From Macrostomum lignano (lineage: Eukaryota), in the NCBI GenBank assembly GCA_002269645.1, contig NIVC01000854.1, forward strand, positions 62,001-126,000: a DNA stretch of 64,000 bases. Direction: 5' to 3'. The position numbers and the translations under genes were made by a program. Shown here in pieces: positions 1 to 63,700 of this stretch. Below the pieces are notes generated by a model that was given only the letters and a program-made list of their open reading frames with translations, was not told the DNA's origin and did no database searches. The stretch's first letter is position 1. Each line of letters opens with the position of its first letter.

Positions 1-109
1 TCACATTTAAGAAATGACTAAGAAAATCGCGACAGCTCCGCCTATCCGCAAGCCTTTTTTATGTTAAGTCCCTTGTGAAATTCTCACAGTGACAAACCGC
101 ACCACTCAC

Positions 110-2416
110 CGCTGTACTCAGCCAGCTCAACGTGACCGTTTACGAGACGGCTCGTCGACGCGACATCCTGGCAGTCGCACACCCCACCGCCGATGTGGTA
201 GCGACTCCCGCTAAGGCAGGTGACATCGATATCCGAGTCGGCTCCGATGGTGCCGTCCAGCCGTTCAAAGCAGGCCCCCCAGCCCTCCGCGAAGCTGCCA
301 ACAATTCGCAGATTTGTCTGCTGCAGGTAGGACCGGCTGACTGCTTCGAGTGCTCTGGCCAGGGCGGACTGCTTGGCAGCCCGGCTAGCGGTGAACCCGG
401 CTAAGCGCATGCTGTGGCAGAGTTGCTTGCTGAACTCAGCTGATGACAGATTCAGCCTGAGAGATTGCATGGAGTGCACTGTTCGACCTCAAGCAGCAGC
501 TAGCAGGGGGGTCTTTCATCGATATAAATTGCATGAATATAGAGTTAAGGCACTAGTGAATATATTTGTAAATTATGAGTAGTGAAATCAGTTTTTTCCT
601 TGAAATTCTCGGCTCCATTCCAAACGACTCAGGTTAAGGACGATAGAAGAGATCGCCTAGAGATCGAAGACGTGTGCCTATACATGTAGGTAAGTACTCA
701 ATAGATAAGTCTATTTGACAACGAGTATGATCTCAGGTGCTAAAATAATCTTACAGCTGTTTGTAATTCCGATTATTCTCCGGTGTCTCCAGGGCAGTAG
801 CCAGAAACTCTCGGTCAATCAGTGGGTCGTCGAGATCTAAGACGTCGGATTCACAAATGCCGTTGGATAGTAACAGTCGCAGGACTTCTGGATGCCGGTT
901 TCGGGCTGCATTCTCCACTGGTGAGCTGGCCAAGCGTCTGTCTCGACTGCCGGCTGCAGCACCAAAGTTGAGCAACAGTTTTACAGCGTCAGCGTGTCCG
1001 TTGTGAGCTGCCACCCACAGCGGTGTCTCGCCGAAGTTGCTCGACAAGTTCACATCGGCTCCTTTGAAGTCAAATGTGTGATGCTTTTGCTTCTAATATT
1101 CAAGTCGCTGGAGGGGTTTGGGAACTGCCGTGAGCCCAAGGCGACAGTTGACTTGCAGCCAGACAGGAGGCAAGCAGTCATGCTGCCTCTTCTATTAGCC
1201 TCTGAGCACGTACATGCTCCTACATGATATACAGTACAGTAGTACTGACCTTGTAGTCAGATATGTACACACTGTGTCCTGCTTTGAGTGGTAAGTTCAG
1301 ATGCGGATGTAAATGCGAATGTGGAGCAAGTGGCGATTTTAGATACGGATGTGAAACCCGTGGTCAGATGCAGATGTGAAACCCCGTGGGAATTTCAGAT
1401 GCAGATGTGAAACCCCATGGGGATTTCAGATGCGGATGTGAAACCCGTGGGGATTTCAGAAAGAGACGTGAAACCCTATCGGGATTTCAGATGAGGATGT
1501 GAATGTGGATGTGGAGCAAGTAGTAATTTCCAATGTGGATGTAAATGCGGATGTTAAACCATTGGTGATTTCTGATGCAGATGTGGAACCATTGGTGAAT
1601 TTAGATATGGATATGTGGAGCAAGGGTTGATTTCAGATCCCAACGAAAGATATGGATGTGTATTTAAAAAGGAAAAGCTGGGACAGTAAAAGTACATATT
1701 TAATCGCCTATGTCACCTGCAACGAGCAGTTGCGCAGAAATTTTCGCGTGCCCCAAACGGCTAGCAGCCCACAGAGCCGACTGTCCCTCGGAGTTGGTCG
1801 TGTCAACTTCTGCGCCGGCGGTCAGCAACTTTTGGACAACTCTTGGACAATCCGACTGGCTAGCGATCCACAGCGCGGATTCTCCGCCGCTGCGCCGGCA
1901 GTCGACATTGTCGGCCTGGAGCAGCGAGTCGACAATGTCAGCGTTGCAGTTGCAGGCCGCGATCCACAGTGGGCAAATTCCTACCTGGTTGAGCAGGTCT
2001 TGCCGAGCACCATTCCGCAGAAGCAACTCCACCAGACGGAGATGGTCGTTGCAAGCAGCGATCCATAGGACGCTCTCGCCGCTGCGTCTCTGACAGTCAA
2101 TGTCGGCTCCTAAGCCTAGCAACAGCCTGGCAACGCTCAGTTGACCGTTTTGGCCTGCAATCCATAGAGGCGTCTCTCCTCGCTCGTTTCGACAATCGAC
2201 GTTTGCGCCGGCTTCGACGAGCGTCCGAGCGACGTCCAATGCGCCCGCGTTGGCAGCCAGCCACAGAGGCGTCTCGCCGCGCTCGTTGCGACAGTTTGGC
2301 GACTTCGTGGCGGTCACCGACGGGGGATCCGGGATGCGCAGCAGGCGTCGAGTCTCGTTGACGTCTCCGGAAACGGCTGCGTGAAGCAGCTGACGATCCC
2401 AGGATTCAGAGTTCAT
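110..2416 (-). CDS. Ankyrin-repeat protein fused to a cGAS/Mab-21-like nucleotidyltransferase (cGLR-like); 3' end lies beyond the window start
   Basis: Exons 2416-1717, 1061-755 and 456-110 with GT-AG introns and consistent phases (LLVAG|ADVN completes an ANK repeat; YKQL|LNLSS). About 9 ANK repeats (GETPLWxAA..G) followed by RIVGSFAEGWG...DSDID, a pol-beta-superfamily GS...DxD motif. Donor G|GTGAGT at 110/109 opens a further intron. Confidence 0.8.
1290..1650. repeat. Degenerate ~30-bp tandem repeat (GATTTCAGATGCGGATGTGAAACCCGTGG-like) in intron 1 of the ANK-NTase gene
   Basis: Repeated units visible directly. Confidence 0.8.
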
Positions 2417-6727: not shown

Positions 6728-8212
6728 CCTTTGAATCAACCGCCAACCATTGAATCAACCTCCAACCATTGAATCAACCTTCAACCATTGAATCAACCTC
6801 CAACCATTGAATCAACCTCCAACCATTGAATCAACCTCTAACCACTGAATCAACCTCCAACCACTGAATCAACCTCCAACCACTGAATCAACCTCCAACC
6901 ACAACCTCCAACCACTGAATCAACCGCCAACCATTGAATCAACCTCTAACCACTGAATCAACCTCCAACCACTGAATCAACCTCCAACCACTGAATCAAC
7001 CTCCAACCACAACCTCCAACCACTGAATCAACCGCCAACCACTGAATCAACCTCCAACCACTGAATCAACCTCCAACCACTGAATCAACCTCCAACCACT
7101 GAATCAACCTCCAACCACTGAATCAACCTCCAACCAGTGAATCAACCGCCAACCAGTGAATCAACCTCCAACCACTGAATCAACCTCCAACCACTGAATC
7201 AACCTCCAATTACTGAATCAATCTCCAACCACTGAATCAACCTCCAACCATTGAATCATCTTCCAAACAGTGAATCAACCTCCAATTACTGAATCAACCG
7301 CCAACCACTGAATCAACCTCCAACCAGTGAATCAACCGCCAACCACTGAATCAACCTCCAACCAGTGAATCAACCTCCAACCACTGAATCAACCTCCAAC
7401 CACTGAATCAACCTCCAACCAGTGAATCAGCCTCCAACCAGTGAATCAACCTCCAATTACTGAATCAATCTCCAACCACTGAATCAACCTCCAACCATTG
7501 AATCAACTTCCAACCATTGAATTAACCTCCAATTACTGAATCAATCTCGAACCACTGAAATAACCTCCAACAACTGAATCAACCTCCAACCACTGAATCA
7601 ACCTCCAACCATTGAATCAACCTCCAACCAGTGAATCAACCTCCAATTACTGAATCAACCTCTAATTACTGAATCAATCTCCAACCACTGAATCAACCTC
7701 CAACCACTGAATCAACCTCCAATTACTGAATCAATCTCCAACCACTGAATCAATCTACAACCACTGAATCAACCTCTAACCACTGAATCAATCTTCAACC
7801 ACTGAATCAACCTCCAACCACTGAATCAACCTCCAATTACTGAATCAATCTCCAACCACTGAATCAATCTACAACCACTGAATCAACCTCTAACCACTGA
7901 ATCAATCTCTAACCACTGAATCAACCTCCAACCACTGAATCAACCTCCAATTACTGAATCAATCTCCAACCACTGAATCAACCGCCAACCACTGAATCAA
8001 TCTCCAACCACTGAATCAACCGCCAACAACTGAATCAACCTCCAATTACTGAATCAACCTCCAACCACTGAATCAATCTACAACCTTTGAATCAACCTCC
8101 AACCACTGAATCAATCTCCAACCTTTGAATCAACCTCCAACCACTGAATCAACCTCCAACCAGTGAATCAATCCCAACCTTTGAATCAACCTCCAACCAG
8201 TGAATCAACCAC
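6728..8212. repeat. 19-bp minisatellite (TGAATCAACCTCCAACCAC), ~78 units
   Basis: Period 19 (6732, 6751, ...) across ~1.48 kb. Confidence 0.97.
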
Positions 8213-8559
8213 CAAACGCTCTAGTGGTTCGTACTAGTACTCTAGTTTTCCATGATTCAGTTCCTCTGAGATGTTTCACTCGGGTTCAGGACAACTTGAA
8301 ACTTAAATCTTCAATTTTAAGCTGAGGTAGCTCGGATTGTGGCATTATCGTATATTTTAATGAGAGTAGAGTCAGAAATGGTGTGGAGGCTCCATGTCAA
8401 AGCATTTAAAACTATATTTTAGATATCACTTCTCCTATAGGTGAGTGAGGTAAATGTCTGTAACTACTACTTCTTAGTAAGTAGCAATTGCAGTTCTAAT
8501 TGCGTAAGATTTGAGAAACACCCATAGAATTTCCAAATAAAAATGAAGTAGTCCAGAGC

Positions 8560-9492
8560 TCAAATGTGAGCAACATTCACCAAGTAGTGCTCATAGCAAC
8601 AGGCCCTTTGATCTCCAGTTATGGATTTGAAGAAAATCGAATAGGGGTTCTCGTGGAACTTCCAAGTACGGAAGCCAATCTTGAACAGGCCGAGCCACAC
8701 TCGAACCAGCTTCCCGTAGTCCGGTCGCTTGTACACCAGCTCGTCTGTGTGCGACTCAAACAGCAGCTGACGCACCCTGGACAGGCAACCCTCGCGCAGT
8801 GCAGCGTCAAAGCTGTCCCATTCCCACAGTTCGATGTCCACTTTAAGTATGTCAATCGGCGAGTTCTCGAAGCCGAACTGTTTAAATAAGGTACACAACG
8901 TTCGCATTGTCCAACCAGTTTTCTTCTGCACCGAGTTGCTGGGTCCAAGGCCGAGTTTGTAGAACCAGGATGTTTTCTTGCGCTGATGGTCTTCGACTTT
9001 GGTCATGCTCGGATCGAACATGTACACCCGGCAGTGGTAGGCGTCCGCTAGTTCGTCGTCGTACTCGAAGACGCCGTTGATGCCGAAGGAGAATGCTACG
9101 CAGGGTCGCCCGCTGACCCGTCGAATGTCGAATGGCGCTGTAAAGCAAACGTCCCAGCCTCCGTCGACCTCCTTACCAATTCGACGCCAATTGAAACACT
9201 CGATCTGCCTGTGCTGTATGATGAAGTAATATAGATCCTCCAGCTGCCGTGCGGTCATGTTGTGCATGGAGCTTTCAATCAGGGATAGAAAGCTGACATC
9301 CTTTGATACGATTTTTGACTCACTGATTAGCGGTGCTTGAGAGCTACCTGTTGCGCGGCTTACAGACAGCGTCGAAAAATTCTGGTTTAACATGAGCGCA
9401 CCGATCAGGATGATTGCTAGGGCCATCAGCCCAATCAGTGAATAGGTAATCTGACGTTTCGATTGCACTAATGAAGACAAAATAGGACGCAT
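8560..9492 (-). CDS. METTL24: METTL24-like (Methyltransf_22/FkbM-related) methyltransferase with N-terminal signal anchor, single exon, 310 aa
   Basis: Uninterrupted ORF; hydrophobic ITYSLIGLMALAIILIGALML; motifs DGGWDVC, AFSFGINGVFEYD, VYMFDPS, IDILKVDIELWEW, VRQLLFESH, CCYEHYLVN typical of this family. Confidence 0.82.
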   Translation of the reverse strand: MRPILSSLVQSKRQITYSLIGLMALAIILIGALMLNQNFSTLSVSRATGSSQAPLISESKIVSKDVSFLSLIESSMHNMTARQLEDLYYFIIQHRQIECFNWRRIGKEVDGGWDVCFTAPFDIRRVSGRPCVAFSFGINGVFEYDDELADAYHCRVYMFDPSMTKVEDHQRKKTSWFYKLGLGPSNSVQKKTGWTMRTLCTLFKQFGFENSPIDILKVDIELWEWDSFDAALREGCLSRVRQLLFESHTDELVYKRPDYGKLVRVWLGLFKIGFRTWKFHENPYSIFFKSITGDQRACCYEHYLVNVAHI

Positions 9493-14714: not shown

Positions 14715-15014
14715 ATCACATGCAAGTTAAGAATTACATCTAATTGTGCAAAATATTTACATGTTTAATATTTGATCAATTAGATTTGTAAGGTCTGTAG
14801 AGAAATTACAATTAATCAATTCAAGGTGCACTATTGGATTAAATTACATATTGTCTGTATTAAGTTATTGATAGAATTTTTACGACAATTACATGCATTC
14901 TTCTGGAGAAGTAACATCATAATCTTATAAATTACAGGTATCCTATCTTATATTTTTATCTCAATATTTTTATTTCACATGTAATATTCAAAACCCATGT
15001 TTTATAAGGAGCTT

Positions 15015-16702
15015 TGTAGCGTATTCACTAATATTATAAAAGTATTGCAGCTAGCGTATTATAACTACTGTATTCTAGAAACTTCCGCGTAAACACGCAC
15101 TTTCCATATTTGGCGTTTTGAATTCCCGCGCACCCCCTTTCTAGAAACTGCTTCTCGAACTTTCCGGATTCCGGAATGTTCCATCAACACGAATATAAAT
15201 ATACAGCACCCTAGCACGCAATTACTCAAACCCCGTTCTCTCTATTCTTTTCCACACGGAAAACAATCAAAGAAAAATTAAAGCAAACGAACCACCGCGT
15301 TTCACGCCTCAATTATTTTCGCTATTCTACAACTGGTCCGGTGAGGCGTCCAAAATTCATCTGAGTCCCCAGCAGGGGGCTAGGCCGTCGAAGTGCGTGT
15401 AAATATCCGTGTAAATACTGCCTGAATGTAGCATAACGCCATCATCGACATTGCCATCAACGCCATGCCTCATCGTCGTCTGCACGCGCCCGTCGTCCAC
15501 GCCACTACTGGATATAGCTACCGGATGCGTCATACATGTACGACACGATATTAACCTGATCGACGTAATTCTACAAACGTGGTATCGAAGTTGACACGGA
15601 ACTCATCGACGACAGACAGACAAATGCCTACACGGGTATTACCAGGCCGTTCGATAGAGTCTTCCGTGAACCCCACCAAATTCTACGCCAAAATAAGCCG
15701 AAATATCACCAGTCAACCAAGCTGCTATTGACCAAGGAACGCGCTGCTGAAACCTTCGGCGATCGTCTTTATATGACACCTTCCACGAGGTGATCGACAT
15801 CCCGAGGGGCAACCCAGCCTGTCAATCGGTTCGCCTTGTGCGCTCCATCAGCCATGCCCAGCAATATTCAGCGACCGCCCGCCGTCGTCCTCATATTATT
15901 CTCGGGAGTCTGCCTGCAATGCGAAAGGTCGTCCTGCCTGACGATCCGTCGTCCTGGAGTGTGGCTGAGCGTGCCACAAGCATCCCAAGTTCTCCTACCA
16001 GAAGCGCGTTGCGTGTACACCTGCTACGAGATGCCTACCGAAGCAGAGCGACAGCCCGCCTCGACTCACGGTGCACCGATCTTGTTCCGGGTGTCGTCTG
16101 TCTGCATCCTGGCACATTCCGTCTATGTACATTGCTATTCGGCCAATCGGGGGCATCGCAGTAAGGTCTGATTTGCGAAATGACTAATTAATCAAGCAGC
16201 TTGACTTCACCAGTAATAACGTTTCACTTATTATTGAATATGTACATCATCGCCCCTATACTGTAACAGTTTGAAATCTGGATGTACAAACGTAAATGTC
16301 CACCCCCCCCCCAATTCATCATCTAATGTATATATATTTTTTCCTGTACTTCTCCAGGTGACTCCGTCTCCGGCGGGGGAACTGTTGTAGCGTATTCACT
16401 AATATTATAAAAGTATTGCAGCTAGCGTATTATAACTACTGTATTCTAGAAACTTCCGCGTAAACACGCACTTTCCATATTTGGCGTTTTGAATTCCCGC
16501 GCACCCCCTTTCTAGAAACTGCTTCTCGAACTTTCCGGATTCCGGAATGTTCCATCAACACGAATATAAATATACAGCACCCTAGCACGCAATTACTCAA
16601 ACCCCGTTCTCTCTATTCTTTTCCACACGGAAAACAATCAAAGAAAAATTAAAGCAAATGAACCACCGCGTTTCACGCCTCAATTATTTTCGCTATTCTA
16701 CA
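15015..16702 (+). mobile_element. Non-autonomous LTR retroelement (317-bp LTRs, 1054-bp internal region without recognisable pol)
   Basis: LTRs 15015-15331 and 16386-16702 (TGT...ACA), one visible difference (AAACGAA vs AAATGAA); 4-bp TSD GCTT; PBS-like TGGTCCGGTGAGG at 15334; GGCGGGGGAA purine tract before the 3' LTR. Confidence 0.9.
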
Positions 16703-21125: not shown

Positions 21126-22962
21126 ATGGCTCACTCCAAAGGCACCAACACTTACAATCGACAGAACTGGGAGGATGCGGAGTTTCCCATCCTGTGCCAG
21201 ACTTGTCTGGGAGAAAATCCCTACTTAAGAATGATGAAGGAGCGCTATGGTAAAGAGTGCAAGATTTGCACCAGGCCATTCACCGTGTTCCGCTGGTGTC
21301 CCGGGCCGAAGTCGCGATTTAAAAAGACAGAAGTCTGTCAGACCTGCGCTAAGATTAAAAATGTCTGCCAGACCTGCATTCTGGACCTGCAGTACGGACT
21401 GCCAGTTGAGGTTCGGGATAAAGCGCTTAAGATTAACGAGAAACTGCCTAAATCCGATGTGGGGCGCGAGTATTATATGCAGCAGGTTGAGCGAGTGCTG
21501 GCTGACGACCCAACTGTGCCATGGCAGGTGAGAACTGTGGACATTGCACTGTGTTTTAATTTATTCATAAATCATGCAATGAGTGCAATGCTTGTTTTTG
21601 ATGCTATCACGTCATTTAACCAGTCATATACTCACCAATCTAGGCATTCACACCCTCCTTCACTTGCTCATAGTTATTCACACCCTCCTTCACTTGCTCA
21701 TAGTTATTCACTTCGATATTCTCTCACTTACTCAATCACTCAATCACTTACTCAATCAATTACTCACTCCATCACTCAATCACTCACTCAATCACTCAAT
21801 CACTCGCTCACTCACTTACTCAATTACTCACTCACCCACACCGTGTAAACCAGTTATTATTTATTAAAAATAAAAACAAATATGCTCCAAAAATATACTC
21901 GTATATAACAACCTGAACACAGAACCAGGCTCTGACTGCCGGCGCTCTGACGGCCGGCGGCGGGGGTGGCGGCAGCGGCGTTGGTGGCAGCGGCGCTCTG
22001 GCAGCCCTAGCAGGCGGCAGCGGCGGCGGCGGTAAGGCTCCGGCGCCGTCCTCGGAGATGCTGCACCGGCTGGCCAGAACTACGCCATATTATAAGCGGA
22101 ACCGGCCGCATATTTGCAGCTTCTACGTTAAAGGCGAATGCAGACGCGGCGAGGAGTGTCCGTATAGGTGAGCGGTTGGATTTTGCCCCTGTGCCACTCA
22201 CCTATGCGCCCTGTGCTACTCACCTGTGCACATGTGCCCCTGTGCTACTCACCTGTGCGCCCTGTGCTACTCACCTGTGCGCCCTGTGCTACTCACCTGT
22301 GCACATGTGCCCCTGTGCTACTCACCTGTGCGCCCTGTGCTACTCACCTGTGCGCCCTGTGCTACTCACCTGTGCCCCTGTGCTACTCACCTGTGCCCCC
22401 TGTGCTACTCACCTGTGCCCCTGTACTACTCACCTGTGCCCCCTGTGCTACTCACCTGTGCCCCTGTGCTACTCACCTGTGCGCCCTGTGCTACTCACCT
22501 GTGCGCCCTGTGCTACTCACCTGTGCCCATTCACTAAAAGTTCTATTTACCAGGTAACGAACGACATGACAGTGTTGAAAAACCAAAGCTTTCACCTGTC
22601 CATCCCACAGGCACGAGCGCCCAACAGATCCCGACGACCCGCTGTCCGAGCAGAACATCCGCGATCGCTACCACGGCACAAACGATCCCGTGGCTAACAA
22701 GCTCATGACTAAATACGCCACTATTCAACAGCAGCGAGAGGAGGCCGCGCTGGCTGCTCTGGAGGCTGGGCCGTCGTCAGAGTCATCGTCCGCGGCTGCG
22801 GCTTCAACTTCGAAAGCTTCAGCATCGGGTAGTTCGGCTTCAACTGAGCCGCTACCGCCAGGCGTTCCCAGCCTGCTGCCAGGGCTGTCATCGGGCGGTG
22901 GTGGCAGCAGCAGCTACCCCAGCCAGGACCCGGCCAGAATGGGCGGCTTCGCCAAGCGATGA
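21126..22962 (+). CDS. RBM22: Pre-mRNA-splicing factor RBM22 (Slt11/Ecm2-Cwc2 family) lacking the RRM
   Basis: Exons 21126-21527, 21923-22167, 22611-22962; [26 protein letters not shown]..., CCCH finger [44 protein letters not shown] and terminal [10 protein letters not shown]. Confidence 0.95.
21640..21840. repeat. (CACT/CAAT)n-like microsatellite in RBM22 intron 1
   Basis: Direct inspection. Confidence 0.85.
22186..22527. repeat. 20-22-bp minisatellite (CTGTGCTACTCACCTGTGCGCC) in RBM22 intron 2
   Basis: Direct inspection; explains the spurious ORFs at 22168-22697. Confidence 0.95.
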
Positions 22963-27000: not shown

Positions 27001-30000
27001 TCCCAGATCCTCAGTTGCTGGGCCAGCCTCCCAAATCCCCAGTTGCTAGGCCAGCCTCCCAGATCCCCAGTTGCTGGGCCAGCCTCCCAGATCCCCAGTT
27101 GCTGGGCCAGCCTCCCAGATCCCCAGTTGCTGGGCCAGCCTCCCAGATCCCCAGTTGCTGGGCCAGCCTCCCAGATCCCCAGTTGCTGGGCCAGCCTCTC
27201 AGATCCCCAGTTGCTGGGCCAGCCTCCCAGATCCTCAGTTGCTGGGCCAGCCTCCCAGCGTGTCAGTTGCTGGGCCAGCCTCCCAGATCCTCCTTTGCTG
27301 GGCCAGCCTCCCAGATCCCCAGTTGCTGGGCCAGCCTCCCAGATCCTCAGTTACTGGGCCAGCCTCCGAGATCCTCAGTTGCTGGGCCAGCCTCCGAGAT
27401 CCTCAGTTACTGGGCCAGCCTCCGAGATCCTCAGTTACTGGGCCAGCCTCCGAGATCCTCAGTTACTGGGCCAGCCTCCGAGATCCTCAGTTACTGGGCC
27501 AGCCTCAGAGATCCTCAGTTACTGGGCCAGCCTCCCAAATCCTCAGTGGATCCATTCTTTCAATATAACAACGCTGCCCTACCACCGCAGCGGACCAGCT
27601 GTCACTCCGCTGCCAGTCGGCTCTGTCCTACTCCATCGGTGCCGTCTGCCTCCTGCTGTGCGCCGCCTGCTGCCGCACCCTGGGTCGCAGCCTCAATCCC
27701 ACCTATTCGGCTTTTACGCAATCGTTGCGCAAGGCTCGACGCGGCTTCACAGCCGAGGACAAAGAATCTCTGTCCAAGTACGACTTCGACTTCTGGGCTT
27801 GGCCAGTTGAGTTCAAAGCGACTCAAACTCAGCCTCTTCAGCCTGCTTCTGGGCCAGCCGAACCGGTGCCTCATCCGTTGGATTGGTTGCTAGGGCCGGC
27901 CAGTCGGTTGCTAGTGCAAACAATCGGAATCAGAATGACTTATCCCGGCTGCACTGCGCTGATGAACGCGGTGGTTCGACCGATGCTGCAGCAGACCAGG
28001 GCCAGATTGCAGGTTGGTTTGTGAACTTTCCAAGAATTGATAATCACTAATTTAAATCTCTTCCTTTCTTAGAATAGCTGTTTCTTCGAAAATTAATTTT
28101 TTTTATTTGTTTTAGCTAAATTCGTCTTTTTTAAATAGTTTTCTTTCTCTATAAATGTTCTCTTGCAGAAATTTTTGCTACTTAAAGTAGTTTGGCTTTA
28201 AAAAAGCATTTTATAAAAACATTATCAATTGTCAGAAATTGTTTTCTAGAATTAAGAAATTTTGCTTTATCGAAAAGGTTTTTACTACAATACTTAAATC
28301 TAAAGTATTAAAAAATTAAAATTAAAGTATTAAAATTAAAAAAGTAAATTAAATTATGTCTGATATGGTTTTTTTTCAAAGACAAGATAAGGCTTATTTT
28401 ATTGGCTCTTACCCCCAAGCCTAAACCCTTAAACTCCACACAGAACCCCTGCCCCTGCCCCGCCATCCAATTTTTATTGCCTTCCTCGGTTTTTCCAGCC
28501 TAAATCTGCCATGTACATTCAGTGGCCAATGTACATTGCTGCTGAACCAATTAGCAAACTGTTTACACGCCTAGCCTGCAAGCTTCAGCCGCCTTTATTC
28601 TTATAAAATAGCTTATGTATTCTTTACTGCTGCTGAACTGAAAGTAGACGGCTTGACTTAACTTGACTTAGCTGCAGGGGGCGTCCGGCGGATGCAGCGA
28701 GGAGGCGGAGGAGACCGCCCATTCCGCTAGCCCCTGGCGACCAACGACTTCCGTTGAAGTGGTGTCGCTCAGGGGGACCCGTCGGTCTCGCCTGCAGCGC
28801 GGTCCTCCTCACCGACGGTGGGGAAGAAATCAGCTCGTCCGGTGTCCCTGAGGTACCGGGCGAGCAGCGGGATGCTCTCGGGCCTGCAAACGTCGGAGAG
28901 AACCGGGTTTGGCCCGAGGTGAGTAAGCCTGGCCCTGGTGAAAACCGGGCAGTGGCAGATAAAATGCTCGGCGTTTTCACTGCCTGAGCGGCAGAAGGGG
29001 CACCGCTCCTCGGGTACTTGGCCCTGAAGGAAGCGGTGGCGAGAGAAGCAGCCATGCCCGGAGAGGGCCATGCTAACTGCTCTGAGGTCTCTGCGGTTGA
29101 GCCTCAGGAGGGCTCTACGCAGGAGAGGAGAGGGACAGGGGACGGCAGCACGGGATTGCCTACAATTCCGGGTGTCGTGCCACCTGCGGAGATGCTCGGA
29201 GTCAGCCCAGCGCTTAACGCGGGAATTGATCACCGAGGCGGGGATGGGGGCACCCGGGCCCGGCCCCAATAGCGCGCCGGCGGAGCCAGCCTTGGCCAGC
29301 AGGTCAGCGCGCTCGTTGCCGAGGAAGCCGGCGTGGCCCGGGATCCATCTGAGCTCCACCTGGTTGCCTAGCGCAAGCCCGTTGAGCTGGGTGTTGCAGT
29401 CCAGGACGGACCTGGAGCTGGCGGTGCTGCGGCAGAGGGCCCGAAGGGCTGCTTGGCTGTCAGAGTGAAAAATAAATTTCCGGCCGCTAAGCTGCCTTCG
29501 GCGCAGCTCTGCCGCGCAGGAGCTGATGGCAAGCACCTCGCTCTGAAAAACACTGGAGTTGAGCCCAGTGTGCTGGGAGTAGTTCCACACCACTTCTCCC
29601 TTGAAGAAGACGCAAGCTCCGAAGCCTGAAAGACCATGCCTCATAGAGCCGTCAGTGTAACAGTGGACTTCAGAGTCGCTCCAGCTGTCACTCGCCTCGT
29701 GTCGAGGCTGAATGGTGACCTTATACCTTTGGCTCAGGAGAAGGGTGGCTGGGATCGAGTCCGTGAGGATGTTGAGCCCGCCACACTCCTCGAGAGCCTT
29801 GAGGCAGAGGTCAGAGTGCGGGATAAGCGACCGCTTCTTAAAGGCCCGCACTTTCTTGAAGGCCACCCCAGCATCCAGAAGACGCCGGGTGCTCTTCGCC
29901 GCCTCTCCTTTGATATAAATATCCAAAGGAGGGGCACAGAGGAAGGCATTCATGCCTTCAAAAGGAGTAGAGGGTGGAGCGCCCATAGTCATGCGGCAGG

Positions 30001-33000
30001 CTCTGCCCTGGATTTTGTAGAGAGCGTCGAGGTTGCTCTTGACGCTCAGGCCGCTAGCCCACACGAGGCTGGCGTAACTGATCGAGGGGCGGATGATGGC
30101 AGTGTAAATCCACCACAGCTTCCTGGGGGTGAGCCCCCAGGTGGTGCCCACGGCGCGCCTGATCTGAGCCAGTACAGCCAGGGCTTTTTTGGCTTTAGTT
30201 TGAATGTGCGGAGTCCAGTTAAGCCTGTGGTCCAGAGTGAGGCCCAGGCAGCGGACCTGCTTCTCCATGGAAATATTCTTTCCATAGAGGGTGAGGGGCT
30301 TAATGGTCCAGAGCAGTTTGTTGGTAAACATGACCGCTGTGGTTTTCGACTCTGAGAGTCTAAGGCCACATTGGTCTGCCCAACGCTCCGCTCGTCCCAG
30401 AAAGCCCTGCAGAAGGTCTCTGATGGTATCAACCGAGGGGCCCGCGCATATCGCGGTCACATCATCGGCATAGCCCACCTTGAGAATGGGGTCGTGGAGA
30501 TCACTGCAAAGCAACTCATCCATGACCATGTTCCAGAGAACGGGGGTGAGAACGCCGCCCTGGGGGCCCCCTTTCAGGACAGGCACCGAAAGAGAGCTGC
30601 CGCTCAGGTGGGCCACAACAGTGCGGTTTCGGATCATGAACATGATCCACCGGACAAGGTGAGGGTGCGTGGCCCTGGATTCCAGGGCTCTGCAAAAGGC
30701 CTCGAAGATGACGTTGTCGAAGGCCCCCTCAATGTCCAGGAAAAGCGAGAGGGCAAAGCCGCTGCCAAGAACGGCCCTCTCCAGGAAGTCAACAATGACA
30801 TGGAGAGCACTCTCGGTTGACCTGCCCGCGCGGAAGGCGTGCTGGTTCTGCGAGAGTGGGAAGCGCTTCAGCTCGACCGAAAGTAGGCGCCAAAGCACCA
30901 GTCTCTCGAGGAGCTTGAGGCAGAAAGAAGTGAGGCTGATAGGCCTGAAGGCCTTCACCGATTGGTAGTCGCTCTTTCCAGGCTTGGGGATAAAGACCAC
31001 CCGGGCCTCTCTCCATGCAACTGGTACATAGCCCAGCTCCACACAAGCTCGAAGGAGACGACAGAGCAGGTCCAGGAAGCGGTGGTTTTTCACCGCCTCG
31101 TGCAAGAACGCTGGGTAGATGCCGTCGGGCCCAGGCGCCTTGAACGGGTTAAAGGACCTTGCCGCTCTAATAATGCGGTCTTTGGTGATCATAGACTTTG
31201 CTAGGCCTTGCCCTCCCACTGTGTGGTCGGGCGGGCCCTGCTGAGTCGGAGATTTAGGGAAAAAACTGTTGAGCATGAGCTCTAGAGTCTCTTCCGAACT
31301 CTCTGTGACCGAGCCGTCAGGTCTCTTCACAACAGAGAGTTTAGAAAAACGGTCATTAGTGAGTGCCTTAACCACGCGGGCTACGGGGCGAGAGCCCTCA
31401 AGCCCTTCGCAATATTGGCGCCACTTGGCCGTCTTGGCCCTTCTGACTTGGCCCTTAAACTCGTGGATCGCACGGGTATAGGCCTCTCTGTCAGATGGGT
31501 CTTTGGTTTTGAGCGCTCGCCTTTGGAGGGTCCTGGCTCGGCGCCGAAGGGCCCCGAGCTCTGGGTTCCACCAGGGAGCAGATTTCTTGCCTTTATAGGC
31601 CTTTAGGGGGCAGGCTGCTTCAAAGGCAGTGGTGATCGCCCCGCCCAGGGAGGAGGCGAGATCGTCCACCACCTGGCAGTCAGAGAGGTCACTGGGGGGT
31701 CAAGATCCCGAAGGCCGCGGCTCAGCTTCGAGCCAAAGGCGGCCCAATCGGTGTTCCTGACGTTCCGACTCCAAGTGACCTTAGGCTTTTGCTTGGTCGG
31801 CCCAATGCAAAAGCGGATAAAGCGGTGGTCCGAGAGCGAGTCCTCGTCCCACACTCGCCAGCCCGTAACTGCGGAAAGCAGTCCGGGTGAGGCGATGGTG
31901 GTGTCGATGACTTCGGCCCACCGCCCATTATTGAACGTTGGTGCATTGCCCACGTTACAGAAGTTGAGGTTAGTGCTGCTGACATAGGCCAGCAGCTCCT
32001 CGCCTCTGCTATTGATGTTCTTGCTGCCCCAATGCAGGTGGTGTGCGTTCACATCCCCTGCAATGAGCAGCTCGAACCGATGGGACGCAGCATAGTCAGT
32101 AAGGTTGACTAACGCGTCGCAGACAACTGGGGCATCGCCCGGGAAATAGGCAGAAGCTACCAGCACAGGTTTATTGGGAATGAGGTTATTGATTTGAACA
32201 ACACAGATGTCCCCAGTCGAGAGATCAGGTCTCATCCATGCCTCAAAAGCTTTTGCAGCAAAGACCAAGATCTTGGGCGAGGCTGAGAGCCCGCCATGCA
32301 AAAACAGTGGTAGCCAGATGGCACATTATTTGGCTTACCTTTAGTCATCCAGGGCTCCTGTACGAAGACCAGGCCCGGAAGCTGTTGCTCTGCCGTGCGC
32401 ATCAGGTTGACCGACGCCGCCACGCAGTGCTGGGTGTTGATCTGCAGACACCAGGTAGTCGCTGGCATCATTGCAGATCGGATGTTGCAGCCGCCAGGAG
32501 TTCCTCCTCCTCCTCGGCGCTCACCGGCTTCGGGTCGGGGTCGCCGGTGTCCATGGGCTCTTCTTCAGCAAAAGGCCCCCGATTGGCCGGAAGGCAGTAG
32601 GCAGCGTTCGCCGCCCTTTGCCCACCATCCATGGGGTCCTCCGCCTCAGATTGGCCCAATGCCCTGGAGCAGCCAGCCGCCTGGGCAGGCGGGTCCGTCT
32701 CCAGTCGGCCCTGCCCCGAGGGGTTGGGCCCAGCTGGGACGTCCCCACCCTCCCTGGACGAACTGGTGCGCCTAGGCGTCCCGGCGACCTCTCGCCTCAG
32801 CTGGGAGATTTTGGCGGTACGGACTGCCTCAGCTGCACGCTGGTACAGGCCGCGCCGCTTGGTGCTGCGCGCCGGGCGTCGGTCGCCTCCGCCCTCAGCA
32901 GCGCGCTCAGCTTTGCCCGCGCGGCCGTGCTGCCGGGCAGGGCGGTTTGCTTTGGCAGTCTGAGCAGAGGCTTGCGCCTCGGCCCCGGCCGCCTCCGCAT

Positions 33001-34996
33001 CCCGCCCGCCCTGCTCACTGCCACGGGGAGGGTCGGCCTCGTAGGAGCGGATGCGCAGCTTCCAAAGGCCGACGTTGATGAAGCTGCCGTGTGGATAACG
33101 CCTCATCCAGGCGTCCGACAGCCCCAGGATGGCTGTGAAGCCAGTGCCGTCGGTGCGCTTAAGGGTGTCATGCACCACTAGGCCCGCGGCGGGAAGCTCC
33201 CGGTTGACTGCTAGCAGTCCTTTCCGGAGCTCGTCAGCAGAGGTAACAACGCTCCTGGCCGGGACCCAGATTCGATGCCTCTTGGTCCGGGGGCGCTCGT
33301 CCTCTCTGCAGAAGGCTAGGTTGAGGTCCCAGCTCTGCTCGGGCAGCAGCTCAAGGAGCCGCCGACCCGAGTCAGCATCACTGGGCCAAATGAGAAGGCA
33401 CGAGTCCCTCGTCGCATTCGAATGAATGTTCAGAGGCGTGCCCTTCAGAGTTTGCTTCCACAGGAGGCCATCAACGGCACTTCTCACCTGCTTCAGCTGA
33501 TCGGGAGACAGGCGCGCGTCCTTTCCCAGGATGACAACCGCCGGTTGCCTCTTTGCCGCATCAGCGTAGGAGGCCCGGGGGTCAGTGGAGCTTTCTTCAG
33601 GTGGGCTGTCCACCCTCCCGGCTGCATCGGCCTCCCTATCCTGGGCAGGGGCTTCCGTGGGCTCGAGGCCCTCTTCCGCCACCGCCCCAGACTGGGAAGC
33701 TTCCGCTGCCGCGGGCCGTTGGCCCCTGGCACCGGTTTGGCTTCCGCCCTCCTTGGCCCGCCTCGCCTTGTTAAGTCGACGGCGGGCAGCTCCAGAGGTG
33801 GTGCTGCGTTTCTTAGCAGCTGGAGTAGCAGGTGTCTTCTCGGAGGCACCGCTCAGAGTTGGCTCCACGGGTCTCGCCGAGGCGTCCCCGATGGTAGCAG
33901 GTGGTATGGCCGAGGAGTCCACGGCCCCAGCCGAGGCCGGAGGCACTGTGTCATCCACAGCCGGTTGATTTCTTCGGTTAGAAGCCATTGGCTGGAAGTA
34001 AAAAGGTGGGACTTCCTGAAGAACACAGGCAAAGAGCCGCAAGGCCGCAACCCCAAACCAAGCGGCAGGCCCCCAAAAAGCAAAATACCACCCTGCGGGG
34101 GGACCCAAAAGCGCAAGGGGAACCGTTAGCGACCAGACTACTCCCTGGCCAAGCGTCCATCAGCACGGAGTTACACTGGGACATTAGAGGGTGCGTTTAT
34201 GGTCACACCAGGACCCGGCGCCAACGAATCAGCTCGGCAGGGCCCAAGGGGGCCTGCCTTAACACCCACGGGACGAGTACCCTTCGAAGTGCGCCTTGCA
34301 AGGTGAAAATCAGGAGACAGAGTCTCTTGAGCTATCAGCCCGCCAGGGGAGGCAGGTGTGAGCATCGCTGGCTGGGATAAAGGCCATACCAGTCTCATAC
34401 TGCACAGATAGTTCACCACGCCATTACGTGCAGGACCCGGGGTCCTGGGGGCAACAGCCCCGGCAAAGTAGACGGCTGTTTTACCAAGCATATATACCTG
34501 AGTAGCCCATCTCAGAGCGTTGACTTTCTTACAACTCTTGGTATCCTGAAATTGTTTTTAAGGATAATTTGGATCTGAAGATTATAACTTTTCCTTTCTA
34601 TACTTTTTGATTCTTAAAATTGACAATTTGTTATTCCCCAGAATGACCCATTTCTTTAAACGTATTGCTTATTTGATTTCTTCTGTTAATTCGTACCTTT
34701 AAATATTTGTTTTTTGCATAATACAGACTCAGCACCGCATCCAGCGTTTTAAGCTTCTGACGCCGTCCGGCTTTGAGGTCGAAGCCTTCTTTGCGGACAG
34801 GCGCTCCGGCGGTGACGGCCACGGCAACGGGGAAATTCTCATTGTCTGCTGCGAGGGCAACGCCGGCTATCCGGAGATCGGCTGCACCGGGGTGCCGCTG
34901 GAGAAGGGTCACTCTGTGATTGGCTGGAATCATCCAGGCTTCGCTGGCAGCACCGTGAGTCTCTGGGCCTGCTGTGTGTCTGACTGTGTTTGTCTG

Positions 34997-44830: not shown

Positions 44831-57373
<12,543 letters not shown>

Positions 57374-60726: not shown

Positions 60727-63700
60727 TTTAATGACTCAGACTAGCTATTTAGTTTTGGCGAGAGAAAAACGATGCACTTAACTGAGCCGACTGCTCAATT
60801 CAATATATTTATAGGCACGAGAGTATTGCGTAATAAGAATATTGCTACGAATTCATTGACCAAGCCAGCCGTACATTATTACCGCGCAGAGCGTACACTA
60901 CATCTCTCCTCATATCGGATTAAAAGTGCAACTGCAAAAGGTTTTTAAAAAAATGAAAGATACCACAAATAAATATTGCAAAGAAGAAACATTATTCAAC
61001 AAAATGAGACACTATCTGACACAAAATGTTACTGATTATAGTGCATTAGCCAGAGAATGACAATCTTTTCGCAAGCTCGCGATGCAAAAGCAAAATCAAA
61101 GTGCACCCAAAGATATTAGCGTCAGTCTGCCAAGCGCGAGTTATAGTTAAACCCTATAGTTCACTCTCACCTTGGCCTCTCGGGGGTGTGGTCGCAGCGC
61201 AATTGGAGAGGTCGCGGGTTCGCTCCCTGCAGCTTGTAGGATCGGAGGTGCGGGCTCCCCGACAGGAAAATCGGGCTCTGTATCCGGCGCTACCCGCTTC
61301 AGGTCAGTGCAGTGCCGCCTGAAAACTCTGGCGCCCTGCCGAATGGTCATCGAGTCGCCCTTGACCTTCTCGACCAGCCAGGGTGCCCACTCGAACGGAG
61401 TCTCGCCCTTGAGCGGATTTAGTCGGCGCCGCAGCACTGTGTCGCCGACTTTGAGACCGTGCGGTCTCGCCTGCCGTTGCTTGTCGGTGTAGCGCTTGTC
61501 CTTTGCCTTCACGTCGCCGAAAGCTTTTGTTTCTCGAGGTCGGTCCATGCCCAGGGCTCGCCTTTCCTAGTCAGATTGTGCAGCGGCCTCGCTACGTCCG
61601 CCAGCCCGGGGGTGAATGAGGCCAGATAGTTGACCAGGCCTAGGAACGAGCGCACCTCTGTGGCAGTCTTTGGCTCGGCGAATGCGTGAATGGCCTCCAG
61701 CTTGGACTGGGTTGGTCTGACCCCTTCACGAGACAGCCGCATCCCCATGAATGTGACCTCGGTACGGGCGAGCTTGCATTTTAACGGATTTAGCGTCAGC
61801 CCGTGCTGCGCGAGTCGTCGCAGACATGCCTGCAGGTTGCTGTGGTGCTCCGCCGCGCTGTGCCCATACACGATGATGTCGTCTTGAATCCATTTTACTT
61901 TCGGGAGTCCAGCTAGCACGGATGACATGACCGCCTGGAGAATTTCCTGGGCCGTAGACAGTCCCATACAGAGCCGTGTCAGCCGCCGCAGGCCTCGTGG
62001 CGTCGAAAAAGTCAGAAGATGGCGGCATTCGTCGGCGACTGGGATTTGATAAAATGCCTTCGCAATGTCGAGCTCTGAGAATAGCTGCGCCCCCGCCATG
62101 TCTCCCGTCACCTCCTCGAATGTCGGGATGGGATGCCGCTCTCTAATGACCGACTTGTTCAGGTCTCTCAAGTCCTGCGTAATCCTGATCTCGCCTGGGG
62201 TCTGCTTGGGCACGACGACGATGCGAGCTACCCACTGACAGGGGCCTTCAACCGGCTCGATGATGTCTTGGTCCTCGAGGCACTGTAGCTCGGCGTCGAC
62301 TGCCTGTGCGAGATGTATTGGCACCCTTGATGGGGAATGACAGACCGGCCTGGCTCCCTCTTCCAGGAAGATGCGGGCGGCATAGTTTTTGAGCCTGCCG
62401 ATTCCGCTGAAGACTTGTGCGTTCTCCGTCAGGAGTTCGTCCAGGGCCGGTGCCCCCGGCGCATGTAGGACTTCCTTTGGGATCCCTGCTAGCATGCTGT
62501 CTAGCGAGACCTCGGGATACGGACGCAGCTGGCATGCCACCTTGTTCTCCGGGCCGACTCGCAGAATCTGAAGTCTTTCAGCGCTTCTCCGGCCAATGAT
62601 GCAAGCGCCCTCACCGTCGAGCACCAAGAACGGTAGTGTCTCGTGGATCTCGAACACGCTGACTTGCAGGTCTGCCTTGCCCAGCAGTCTCAGTGGCTCT
62701 TGGCTTCCGTACGGGTAGACCTTGTCGCTGGCGGGCTGCAGCGCGGCTTTTTGCGGCATCCTGTCGTAGGCCGCCCTGTCGATGATGTTGCAGGCCGCGC
62801 CGCTGTCGATGAGCACATTTGCCTTGAGCTCGTTAATGGTCGCAGGCGTCCAAGCTGAGCCGCAGTTCCGCAGGGTAAATAGCTCGTGCTCGACGGGGTC
62901 GTTCTGCAGATATTCGATTCGTCCTGGCGGAGCGCCCTCCTGCGGTTCGTTAACGTTCCTCAGAGGGACTTTAGCTGCTCCTCGGCACGCCCGAGCGAAA
63001 TGACCTATCTTTCCGCAGCGTCGACACGCCTTGTTGCGGGCTGCCTCGCACGTCCGATGCCCTGGCCGCCGCAGCGATCGCAGTTAATGCCGCTGTCTCT
63101 TGCCGCGGCAGCCGGCCTGGTTGAATGCAATGGTTGGTTACGAGGTGGGCGCAGCGCCGCCACATTCGAAGCGGAAGGATGGCCCGTGTCGGCTGCGGTG
63201 CCGATCTCCATGGCCTGGGCCTGCTGTTCCGCTGCCTCCCTCGCTCTGATTCGCTTCATAACATCGTCCAAGGAGACATCGTTGAGCTGCAGGAGTTCCC
63301 TCCTGATCCTGTCGGACCGGTAATGAGCCACGATCTTGTCCCTGATGATAGAGTCTCGGAGTTCGCCGGATGTGCATTGGTCCGCAGCCTTGCGTAGCCG
63401 ATGGTATCAGGCCTCAATTGACTCTTCTTCCTCCTGCCGGCAGATTTCAGATTGGTACCTGAGGAAGACAACGCTGTTCTTTTAGTCGAAGGTTCCCTGC
63501 AACTCTTTGATGAGCTCCTCGGCGGATTCTCCTTTCTCCACGCCGTTATCGTCCATGAAGTCTTCCAGCTTCTCGCCTGCTGTGTAAACTAAGAGTTTCA
63601 GCTGCTGTGTCGCATCTGTGATGCCGGCTGCGCGTATGTAGCTGTTGAACCTTCGTGTCCATGTTTTCCATCGCTGAGCTCTTGTCAGAGGATCGCCTTC

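What the first reader, a model, noticed from the sequence alone, without database searches (positions are those of the whole stretch)
110..2416. Ankyrin-repeat sensor fused to a cGAS-like nucleotidyltransferase (candidate innate-immune receptor)
Seen: three in-phase exons join about 9 ANK repeats to a domain with GSFAEGWG-x-DSDID and a following H...CDC cluster. Established: GS...DxD is the catalytic signature of pol-beta NTases, and the GSxAEG variant is typical of invertebrate Mab-21/cGAS-like receptors (cGLRs), some of which are ANK-fused in other invertebrates. Unusual here: the GS-to-DxD spacer is ~20 residues rather than the usual 9-13. Inference: ANK-gated synthesis of a nucleotide second messenger in a flatworm-like animal, where such signalling is not well characterised. 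The third catalytic acid and C-terminal lobe are outside the window.
Basis: partly seen in the sequence, partly recalled or inferred. Interest (0 to 1): 0.75.

Follow-up and report, generated by a model that had tools for sequence, protein, structure and literature searches.

The report
Flatworm ankyrin-fused cGAS-like receptor gene
The window's left end holds the first three exons of an already annotated Macrostomum lignano gene that joins nine ankyrin repeats to a cGAS-like (Mab21-fold) nucleotidyltransferase; its family is already listed in the published catalogue of animal cGAS-like receptors, but no activity, ligand or downstream receptor is known for it.

Summary
Three GT-AG exons on the minus strand (2416-1717, 1061-755, 456-110) encode 451 aa. 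These are nine ANK repeats, a linker and the N-lobe of an NTase carrying G389-S390, a 20-aa spacer, D411-I-D413 and an H..CxC..H cluster.

The product is identical to residues 1-451 of GenBank PAA75939.1 (BOX15_Mlig000846g4, Macrostomum lignano, 903 aa), an RNA-seq-derived gene model. Exons 4-5 lie beyond the window. They supply the third acid (D469), a Pfam Mab-21_C lobe and a 250-aa helical extension of unknown fold.

An AlphaFold model of the post-ANK module matches oyster Cv-cGLR1, cGAS and MAB21L1. The G-S/DxD/D set is intact in 58 of 63 paralogous domains.

The family has about 73 clusters at 50% identity, and every named cluster sampled is from M. lignano. Li et al. 2023 already classified it as ANK-fused cGLRs and cloned five paralogues (33-34% identical to this one). 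No flatworm enzyme is among their 15 characterised active cGLRs.

Enzymatic activity, a sensing role for the ANK repeats and the effector remain untested; STING is reported absent from other flatworms.

The parts
1717..2416 (-). Exon 1 (ATG at 2416; aa 1-233 plus one base): N-cap and ANK repeats 2-7 up to ...AQLLVAG
   Evidence: ORF and splice enumeration. Donor is GTGACA. Identical to P0074 residues 1-234. Pfam ANK.
1062..1716 (-). Intron 1, containing a 31-bp minisatellite at 1330-1503
   Evidence: GT..AG boundaries. Tandem Repeats Finder result.
755..1061 (-). Exon 2 (aa 234-336): end of ANK repeat 7, repeats 8-9, and the acidic linker DLDDPLIDREFLATALETPENNRNYK
   Evidence: Acceptor ...TTCAAAG and donor GTAAGA. 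Identical to P0074.
457..754 (-). Intron 2
   Evidence: GTAAGA...TCTCAG boundaries.
110..456 (-). Exon 3 (aa 336-451): first part of the Mab21-fold NTase N-lobe, comprising the spine helices, strand beta1 with G-S, the 20-aa spacer, the DxD strand and the His/Cys cluster
   Evidence: Donor is GTGAGT at 109. The exon is 100% identical at nucleotide level to the paralogue in L001. Secondary-structure elements come from the AlphaFold model.
1..109 (-). Start of intron 3. In the paralogous locus this intron is about 2.5 kb. Exons 4-5 (aa 452-903) lie outside the window.
   Evidence: tblastn of P0001 on L001 places exon 4 at 14867-15853 and exon 5 at 16159-16539. Window position 1 corresponds to L001 position 12417.
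838..2401 (-). Nine ankyrin repeats (aa 6-308), interrupted by intron 1; calculated pI 5.6
   Evidence: Pfam Ank E=5e-48 with 7 stretches, Ank_2 E=4e-58. Repeat register and pI.
294..299 (-). G389-S390, the NTase 'activation loop' G-S at the end of strand beta1
   Evidence: G in 80/82 and S in 82/82 family domains. The model puts strand 385-389 directly before it.
234..293 (-). 20-residue spacer FAEGWGACFERLDGTIGADS between G-S and DxD, about 10 residues longer than in mollusc cGLRs
   Evidence: Coordinates. There are no gaps in this stretch in the 22-sequence family alignment or in the five Li et al. constructs. Mollusc comparison.
225..233 (-). D411-I-D413, the putative metal-binding acidic pair at the start of strand beta2
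   Evidence: D411 in 82/82 and D413 in 80/82 domains. Model strand 412-417.
132..197 (-). Conserved His/Cys cluster: H423, C429, C431, H444. C477 and H510 of the full protein are outside the window. Candidate metal or structural site.
   Evidence: H423 76/82, C429 65/81, C431 73/79, H444 66/72.

Best explanation
Window positions 110-2416 (minus strand) hold exons 1-3 of BOX15_Mlig000846g4 (PAA75939.1). The gene belongs to a large, apparently Macrostomum-restricted expansion of proteins with this layout: N-terminal ankyrin repeats, then a cGAS-like receptor (cGLR) type Mab21 nucleotidyltransferase, then a family-specific helical C-terminal extension.

Shown:
- the exon structure;
- the ANK repeats;
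- the Mab21/cGAS fold of the full-length product;
- a complete G-S / D-x-D / D active-site set that is kept across paralogues sharing only 30-45% identity.

Inferred: the protein is a ligand-activated nucleotidyltransferase. Binding of an unknown ligand or partner, most plausibly through the ANK repeats and/or the basic Mab21 surface (pI 8.7), would reorder the unusually long G-S loop. The two-metal site (D411, D413, D469) would then condense NTPs into a cyclic or linear oligonucleotide signal read by a downstream receptor. That receptor is unidentified, and STING has been reported absent from the other flatworms examined.

Identity as an ANK-fused cGLR-type Mab21 protein has confidence of about 0.95. 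The catalytic second-messenger mechanism has about 0.5. The figure given below is for the whole statement.
For: - Exon joins and identity: the spliced product equals residues 1-451 of P0074. The GenBank models derive from a genome-guided RNA-seq assembly (PMC5730564).
- Fold: the family profile hits PDB cGAS-like receptor 1 (8gjy, E=5.8e-7) and cGAS (1e-5 to 2e-4), well ahead of MAB21L1 (0.095). The AlphaFold model has pLDDT 80.9 and pTM 0.82. Foldseek's top hit is Cv-cGLR1 8gjw (E=1.2e-6, TM 0.52 normalised by target), followed by cGAS and MAB21L1. All 50 hits listed are Mab21-family proteins.
- Pfam Mab-21_C scores above its threshold in the full protein.
- Active site: G-S/DxD/D is complete in 58 of 63 domains. 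The residues sit on the expected strands: beta1 end, beta2 start, and strand 468-476.
- The motif meets the final selection rule of Li et al. (G[S/G] plus [E/D]h[E/D] X50-90 [E/D]), with a 53-aa gap.
- BLASTP against the five M. lignano constructs in Li et al. Table S3 gives E=1e-42 to 1e-68.
- ANK-cGLR fusions are documented, including in M. lignano.
- The six amino-acid differences between the window copy and paralogue g3 within aa 1-451 all fall in the ANK part, while exon 3 is identical.
Against: - No enzymatic activity is known. Li et al. screened five paralogues as Mab21 domains without the ANK part, and their 15 characterised active cGLRs come from insects, anemones, molluscs, hydra and corals, not flatworms.
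- The residue before G-S is V388, not the Q/T of the h[QT]GS search motif. The 20-aa spacer sits at the extreme of the allowed X8-20.
- The Pfam N-terminal Mab-21 model (PF03281) does not hit.
- Only one of five AlphaFold models reached pLDDT 80; the others scored 57-69.
- The fold search does not separate cGLR/cGAS from the non-immune MAB21L1.
- cGAS and STING are reported lost in Schistosoma and not found in Schmidtea, so the canonical receptor may be missing.
- The window copy's full protein has Q at position 510, where 65 of 68 family domains have His. That position is outside the window.
Confidence: 0.6

Rival explanations
1. The protein is a non-catalytic Mab21-fold scaffold or nucleotide-binding adaptor. 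It would use the ANK repeats and the helical C-terminal extension for protein-protein interactions, and the conserved acidic residues only to hold a nucleotide or metal cofactor. MAB21L1 and MiD51 are thought to work this way (that statement rests on my own knowledge of those proteins).
For: - MAB21L1 (5eom, CTP-bound) is as good a structural match as cGAS.
- No flatworm member is among the active enzymes of the 140-protein screen.
- The G-S loop is atypically long and the [QT] position is V.
- Two large interaction-type modules, ANK and a TPR-like helical extension, flank the core.
- STING appears absent from other flatworms.
Against: - The full G-S/DxD/D set is kept in 58 of 63 highly diverged paralogous domains. 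That is hard to explain without catalysis.
- The sequence profile is much closer to cGLR1/cGAS (E about 1e-6) than to MAB21L1 (E about 0.1).
- Li et al. state that many cGLRs are inactive in vitro simply because the ligand is unknown.
Confidence: 0.25
2. The protein is an active nucleotidyltransferase with different chemistry from cyclic-dinucleotide synthesis. Possibilities are OAS-like linear 2'-5' oligoadenylates, RNA 3' tailing, or nucleotidylation of a protein bound by the ANK repeats.
For: - There is a weak Pfam match to the poly(A) polymerase palm (MTPAP-like_central, E=0.026 to 0.2, 12-15 bits; up to E=5e-4 in paralogues).
- The GSxxEGxx...SDxD motif style is shared with TUTase/PAP-type NTases (my own knowledge).
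Against: - The Pfam match is far below its gathering score of 27 bits.
- All top structural matches are cGLR, cGAS or MAB21L1, and none of the 50 hits listed is a PAP, TUTase or OAS.
- The C-lobe carries the Mab-21_C signature SYHxKT...HFF.
Confidence: 0.1
3. The window copy is a decaying, redundant duplicate (a pseudogene in the making) in the partly duplicated DV1 genome. It would be transcribed but no longer functional.
For: - The assembly has 180 Mb of blocks that are at least 95% identical.
- Copies g1, g3 and g4 fall in one 90%-identity cluster.
- Six of ten exonic nucleotide differences from g3 change an amino acid.
- The annotated g4 product has an H510Q change at a near-invariant position.
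Against: - The reading frame is open through all three window exons and all splice sites are canonical.
- The 903-aa model is full length.
- Exons are more conserved than the locus as a whole (99.3% against 97.6%), and exon 3 is identical.
- All active-site residues are intact.
Confidence: 0.05

Closest known systems
Macrostomum lignano ANK-fused cGLR candidates catalogued by Li et al. 2023 (PMC9980059): PAA86972.1, PAA45980.1, PAA57558.1, PAA93208.1, PAA68676.1
   Same: Same species and same architecture: ANK repeats N-terminal to the Mab21 domain (Table S2 lists their Ank_2 hits). They share the GS[FY]xEGWG motif, the 20-aa spacer, SD[IV]D, the H..C.C..GH cluster and RPxxD in register. BLASTP gives E=1e-42 to 1e-68.
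   Different: They are only 33-34% identical, so this is a separate subfamily. I could not show that PAA75939.1 or PAA65033.1 is itself in their list, because the stored copies of Tables S1 and S2 are truncated. They were assayed without the ANK part, and no activity is reported for them.
Crassostrea virginica Cv-cGLR1 (PDB 8gjw/8gjy) and other invertebrate cGLRs
   Same: Best sequence-profile match (E=5.8e-7) and best fold match (E=1.2e-6, TM 0.52 by target). They share the GSxxEG...SDxD motif style and the SYHxKT...HFF C-lobe.
   Different: Mollusc cGLRs have a spacer of about 10 aa between G-S and DxD, against 20 here. Most are single-domain proteins (87% according to Li et al.). They have no 250-aa C-terminal extension. 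Structure-based identity is only about 14%.
Vertebrate cGAS
   Same: Bilobal Mab21 fold, an N-terminal spine helix before strand beta1, a G-S loop and a three-acid site.
   Different: There is no disordered basic N-terminus; ANK repeats take its place. The His/Cys cluster lies between DxD and the third Asp, whereas the cGAS zinc thumb H(X5)CC(X6)C follows the third catalytic residue (cGAS positions from my own knowledge). No DNA-sensing evidence exists. STING has been reported absent from the other flatworms examined.
MAB21L1/MAB21L2 (PDB 5eom)
   Same: Equally good structural match (E=1.7e-6). Same Pfam clan.
   Different: The sequence-profile match is about 10^5-fold weaker than to cGLR1 (E=0.095). 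MAB21L1/2 are single-domain developmental proteins, described in the Figure 1 legend of Li et al. as lacking a predicted functional active site. This family keeps G-S/DxD/D.
Stylophora pistillata cGLRs fused to ANK repeats or death domains (Li et al. 2023)
   Same: Precedent for ANK appended to a cGLR core as a presumed ligand- or partner-binding module.
   Different: Cnidarian, not flatworm. S. pistillata encodes seven STINGs. No sequence comparison was made here.

Membership tests
cGAS-like receptors (cGLR), criteria of Li et al. 2023 (PMC9980059) | Predicted structural homology to cGAS (bilobal Mab21 NTase fold) | tested here: met
   AlphaFold model (pLDDT 80.9, pTM 0.82). Foldseek top hits are Cv-cGLR1, cGAS and MAB21L1, E about 1e-6, TM about 0.5 by target, covering whole targets. 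Profile hits to cGLR1/cGAS. This needs exons 4-5, taken from the public full-length model.
cGAS-like receptors (cGLR), criteria of Li et al. 2023 (PMC9980059) | G[S/G] activation-loop motif | tested here: met
   G389-S390, window 299-294. Conserved 80/82 and 82/82.
cGAS-like receptors (cGLR), criteria of Li et al. 2023 (PMC9980059) | [E/D]h[E/D] X50-90 h[E/D]h catalytic triad | tested here: met
   D411-I-D413 is in the window. M-D469-I follows 53 residues later, in exon 4, outside the window and seen in P0001/P0074. The set is complete in 58/63 family domains.
cGAS-like receptors (cGLR), criteria of Li et al. 2023 (PMC9980059) | Search-stage motif h[QT]GS followed by X8-20 | tested here: not met
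   V388 precedes G-S. The family has V in 16/22 and T in 3/22. The spacer is 20, the upper limit. This was the PSI-BLAST refinement motif of Li et al., not their final selection rule, and their own five M. lignano picks share the deviation.
cGAS-like receptors (cGLR), criteria of Li et al. 2023 (PMC9980059) | [quoted passage not shown] | not testable with these tools
   Biochemistry is required. No flatworm enzyme is among the 15 active cGLRs reported.
cGAS-like receptors (cGLR), criteria of Li et al. 2023 (PMC9980059) | A cognate receptor (STING) in the same genome | not tested
   The M. lignano genome and proteome were not searchable here, and the species is missing from Li et al. Table S5. 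cGAS and STING are reported lost in Schistosoma and not found in Schmidtea.
Pfam Mab-21 (PF03281 N-terminal NTase domain / PF20266 Mab-21_C) | Score above the gathering threshold | tested here: inconclusive
   PF20266 passes in the full-length protein (38.4 bits against 24.1, aa 546-621, outside the window). PF03281 gives no hit in any of eight family members. The window-encoded part alone has no Mab-21 Pfam hit.
Ankyrin repeat proteins (Pfam PF00023/PF12796) | Tandem 33-aa ANK repeats above threshold | tested here: met
   Ank 158.8 bits (cut-off 21.1), Ank_2 194.3 bits. Nine repeats by register.
Vertebrate cGAS proper | Zinc thumb H(X5)CC(X6)C located after the third catalytic residue | tested here: not met
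   The H423..C429xC431..H444 cluster lies before D469 in the sequence. The position of the cGAS thumb comes from my own knowledge.
Poly(A) polymerase / TUTase-type NTases (Pfam PF22600, PF01909) | Score above the gathering threshold; PAP-type fold | tested here: not met
   MTPAP-like_central scores 12-15 bits against a cut-off of 27. No PAP, TUTase or OAS appears among the top 50 fold matches.

The most novel reading that the evidence does not exclude
Macrostomum, a flatworm lineage outside the parasitic and planarian groups reported to have lost cGAS-STING, has expanded a private clade of cGLRs. In this clade the ANK repeats would sense non-nucleic-acid ligands such as pathogen or host proteins. 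A 10-residue insertion in the G-S activation loop, together with a His/Cys metal site, would replace the usual nucleic-acid-driven activation switch. The signal would be read by a non-STING receptor, possibly through the family-specific TPR-like C-terminal extension.
Probability: 0.15. Interest if true: 0.7.

Novelty: new member of a known kind. Interest (0 to 1): 0.3.

Why it matters
Flatworms are usually cited as having lost cGAS-STING signalling (PMC4117786, PMC13563047). The cGLR survey says most platyhelminths have only Mab21-like proteins (PMC9980059). M. lignano is the exception. It carries dozens of ANK-fused cGLR-type genes with intact active sites, and it is a transgenic, RNAi-tractable model.

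If these enzymes are active, they would allow a test of what a cGLR signals through where STING may be missing, and of what an ANK sensor module adds.

For this scan, however, the locus is an annotated gene of an already catalogued family. It confirms existing knowledge and does not extend it.

Tried and rejected
- The word-indexed homology search with the 147-aa non-ANK part found nothing. The exhaustive HMMER search was needed.
- phmmer of the same part against PDB sequences gave only a chance hit to superoxide dismutase.
- NCBIfam and PADLOC gave no hits.
- Exact-protein look-ups of the window ORFs 8560-9492 and 1700-2416, meant to reach DNA left of the window, found nothing on record. The paralogous locus was reached through P0001 instead.
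- There is no paralogue of the NTase exon elsewhere in the window.
- The C-terminal extension (aa 652-903) has no Pfam family and no significant PDB fold match. The best hits, E about 0.4, are generic TPR-like repeats such as IFIT1, the TRIF N-terminal domain, Sec72 and MamA. I rejected naming it.
I could not test clustering of D411/D413/D469 or of the His/Cys residues in 3D, or ANK docking, so I ran no further search on the full-length protein.
- Literature searches for Macrostomum with cGLR, Mab-21 or STING found nothing specific beyond Li et al..
- I considered a STING search with the last homology call and decided against it. A word-indexed search with a vertebrate STING would not give a meaningful negative for a flatworm.
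Full report
**What is in the sequence**

The feature lies on the minus strand. Starting from the ATG at 2416, I enumerated all GT/AG combinations. Only one chain of three exons is free of stop codons: 2416-1717, 1061-755 and 456-110. The only variation is a 3-nt alternative acceptor at exon 2. The donors are GTGACA, GTAAGA and GTGAGT. The acceptors are ...CAAAG and ...CTCAG. The phases are 1, 2 and 1.

The spliced product is 451 aa. The window ends 109 bases into intron 3, so the gene runs off the left edge.

**ANK part**

Pfam scores the product at 158.8 bits for Ank (E=5e-48, seven stretches) and 194.3 bits for Ank_2. Register analysis gives nine 33-aa repeats, aa 6-308. These are one N-cap, seven canonical [ST]PLW[IL]AA-type repeats and one C-cap. 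Intron 1 splits repeat 7. An acidic 26-aa linker follows.

**NTase part within the window**

Exon 3 encodes two long helices, then ...LRIVG389-S390. Next comes a 20-residue spacer (FAEGWGACFERLDGTIGADS), then D411-I-D413-V, then H423...C429-x-C431...G-H444.

On its own this stretch has no significant Pfam, NCBIfam, PADLOC or PDB-sequence match. Its only hit is a sub-threshold match to the poly(A) polymerase palm, E=0.026.

Mollusc cGLRs printed in Li et al. Table S3 have about 10 residues between G-S and SDxD.

**Identity of the gene**

An exhaustive HMMER scan of 1.84 billion representatives with the 147 non-ANK residues returned 73 representatives at E<1e-3. The best is a 903-aa protein that is 100% identical over residues 305-451.

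The window's 451 aa are identical to residues 1-451 of P0074 = PAA75939.1, BOX15_Mlig000846g4, from Macrostomum lignano. They differ at six ANK positions from P0001 = PAA65033.1 (g3). UniProt auto-names these proteins 'Mab-21-like HhH/H2TH-like domain-containing protein'.

The GenBank models come from a genome-guided RNA-seq assembly, in which transcripts at least 95% identical share a name prefix. The DV1 assembly contains 180 Mb of duplicated blocks (PMC5730564). The exon joins therefore have transcript support, and g1, g3 and g4 are recent duplicates.

The g3 locus (L001) is 97.6% identical to the window's left end. It shows five exons, with exons 4 and 5 beginning about 2.5 kb beyond the window edge. 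Between the two copies, exons 1-3 differ at 10 of 1354 bases, and exon 3 is identical.

**The rest of the protein**

In the full-length product, Pfam Mab-21_C (PF20266) matches aa 546-621 at 38.4 bits against a cut-off of 24.1.

The whole ~540-aa post-ANK module is conserved across the family. A third acidic residue, D469, lies in R-P-x-x-D-h-h-h-A, 53 residues after the DxD strand.

**Fold**

A nine-sequence family profile hits PDB 'cGAS-like receptor 1' (8gjy, E=5.8e-7). It then hits about 15 cGAS sequences (1e-5 to 2e-4), and MAB21L1 only at E=0.095.

An AlphaFold model of aa 335-903 has best-model pLDDT 80.9 and pTM 0.82; the other four models scored 57-69. It places G-S at the end of a strand, DxD at the start of the next strand, and D469 on strand 468-476. 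This is the classic pol-beta NTase arrangement. A helical lobe follows.

Foldseek against the PDB ranks oyster Cv-cGLR1 (8gjw) first, at E=1.2e-6 and TM 0.52 normalised by target. Human and mouse cGAS and MAB21L1 follow. There are 121 hits at E<1e-3, and all 50 listed belong to the Mab21 family.

The fold is therefore cGAS/Mab21-like and not OAS, PAP or CD-NTase-like. However, fold alone does not separate cGLR from MAB21L1.

**Active-site conservation**

Aligning 110 domain instances from the family to a family HMM gave the following counts:

| Residue | Conserved in |
|---|---|
| G389 | 80/82 |
| S390 | 82/82 |
| D411 | 82/82 |
| D413 | 80/82 |
| D469 | 62/67 |
| H423 | 76/82 |
| C431 | 73/79 |
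| H444 | 66/72 |
| C477 | 64/67 |
| H510 | 65/68 |

The complete G-S/DxD/D set is present in 58 of the 63 domains that cover all five sites. Paralogues share only about 30-45% identity, so this argues for selection on catalysis or at least on metal-nucleotide binding.

The second group (H423 to H510) suggests a structural or metal site. It precedes D469 in the sequence. It is therefore not the positional equivalent of the vertebrate cGAS zinc thumb, which follows the third catalytic residue (my own knowledge).

**C-terminal extension**

Residues 652-903 are conserved within the family, but they have no Pfam hit. Modelled alone (pLDDT 75, pTM 0.78), they have no significant PDB match. The best hits, E about 0.4, are generic TPR-like helical repeats. 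I leave this region unnamed.

**Taxonomic range**

All 18 sampled representatives that carry a name are from M. lignano; one further sampled representative carries no name. The only outside hit was an annelid Mab-21 protein at E=6.7e-6 over 18% of the query.

The number of clusters is inflated by two annotation sets and by the duplicated assembly. Even so, the family is clearly a large lineage-specific expansion.

**What is already known**

Li et al. 2023 (PMC9980059) selected cGLRs by homology to cGAS, a G[S/G] loop and an [E/D]h[E/D] X50-90 [E/D] triad. They note ANK- and TPR-fused cGLRs. [quoted passage not shown]

Their Table S3 lists five M. lignano constructs (#89-93), cut to the Mab21 domain. 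Their Table S2 lists Ank_2 domains in several M. lignano accessions.

These five share the motifs of the window protein in register. They match it at E=1e-42 to 1e-68 with 33-34% identity, and one of them is my P0050.

Their 15 characterised active cGLRs come from insects, anemones, molluscs, hydra and corals. They caution that many cGLRs are inactive in vitro because the ligand is unknown.

Whether PAA75939.1 itself is in their list could not be checked, because the stored tables are truncated.

cGAS and STING are reported lost in Schistosoma (PMC4117786) and were not found in Schmidtea (PMC13563047). M. lignano is absent from Li et al.'s cGLR/STING count table.

**Interpretation**

Identity as an ANK-fused, cGLR-type Mab21 protein is secure. 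The most likely mechanism is a ligand-activated nucleotidyltransferase that produces a nucleotide signal, with the ANK repeats as recognition or regulatory module. This is inferred from three things: active-site conservation, closest similarity to cGLR/cGAS, and precedent.

Four rivals remain:
- a non-catalytic scaffold;
- a different NTase chemistry;
- a decaying duplicate;
- for the effector, an unknown non-STING receptor.

**Verdict**

The finding is an annotated gene of an already catalogued family, so its novelty is low. The open questions of activity, ligand, ANK role, the loop insertion, the His/Cys site, the C-terminal extension and the effector apply to the whole M. lignano family and need experiments.

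Noticed in passing
window 1330-1503 (intron 1 of the gene): A minisatellite of 31-bp units (4.5-5.9 copies, 77-87% matches), with a related 42-bp array at 1483-1572, lies inside intron 1.
   Followed up: no
window 6732-8215: A 19-bp satellite (TGAATCAACCTCCAACCAC) of about 79 copies. It causes the strong negative GC skew of the 6-8 kb bin. The paralogous locus L001 has a shorter array at the corresponding place.
   Followed up: partly
window 8560-9492 (-): A 310-aa uninterrupted ORF with a Pfam Methyltransf_22 domain (E=9e-15). No gene with exactly this product is on record in the assembly collection.
   Followed up: partly
window 21126-21848 (+): The start of an RBM22/SLT11-type splicing factor gene (Pfam STL11_N, E=1.7e-29). 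After about 120 aa the ORF continues into low-complexity sequence that is probably intron.
   Followed up: no
window 28769-34108 (-) and 51666-52466 (+): A non-LTR retrotransposon with RT and RNase H in a 967-aa ORF, and upstream ORFs of 232 and 546 aa. A second, truncated copy of its 3' part, nearly identical in protein sequence, lies at 51666-52466 on the other strand.
   Followed up: no
window 54116-55708 (-): Two LDL-receptor class A domain exons (E about 1e-10) are embedded in long simple-sequence tracts that read as (TDRQ)n / (SVCL)n.
   Followed up: no
window 61509-62816 (-): A 435-aa ORF with a reverse-transcriptase domain (E=9e-22), preceded by what looks by eye like an aspartic-protease motif (DSGA). 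It is probably an LTR retroelement pol fragment.
   Followed up: no
outside the window: aa 510 of P0074 (exon 4 of this gene): The annotated product of the window's copy (g4) has Gln at position 510. Paralogue g3 and 65 of 68 family domains have His there. This could be relaxed constraint on one duplicate, or a sequencing difference.
   Followed up: partly
P0002 and P0003 (M. lignano proteins from the older annotation): Each of these predicted proteins contains two copies of the Mab21 module. They may be real tandem-domain proteins like OAS2/3, or they may be fused gene models of neighbouring paralogues.
   Followed up: no
L001 17741-26542: Downstream of the paralogous gene lie a 142-aa gene on the opposite strand and a 705-aa gene with no Pfam hit on record. 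The corresponding region is beyond the window.
   Followed up: no
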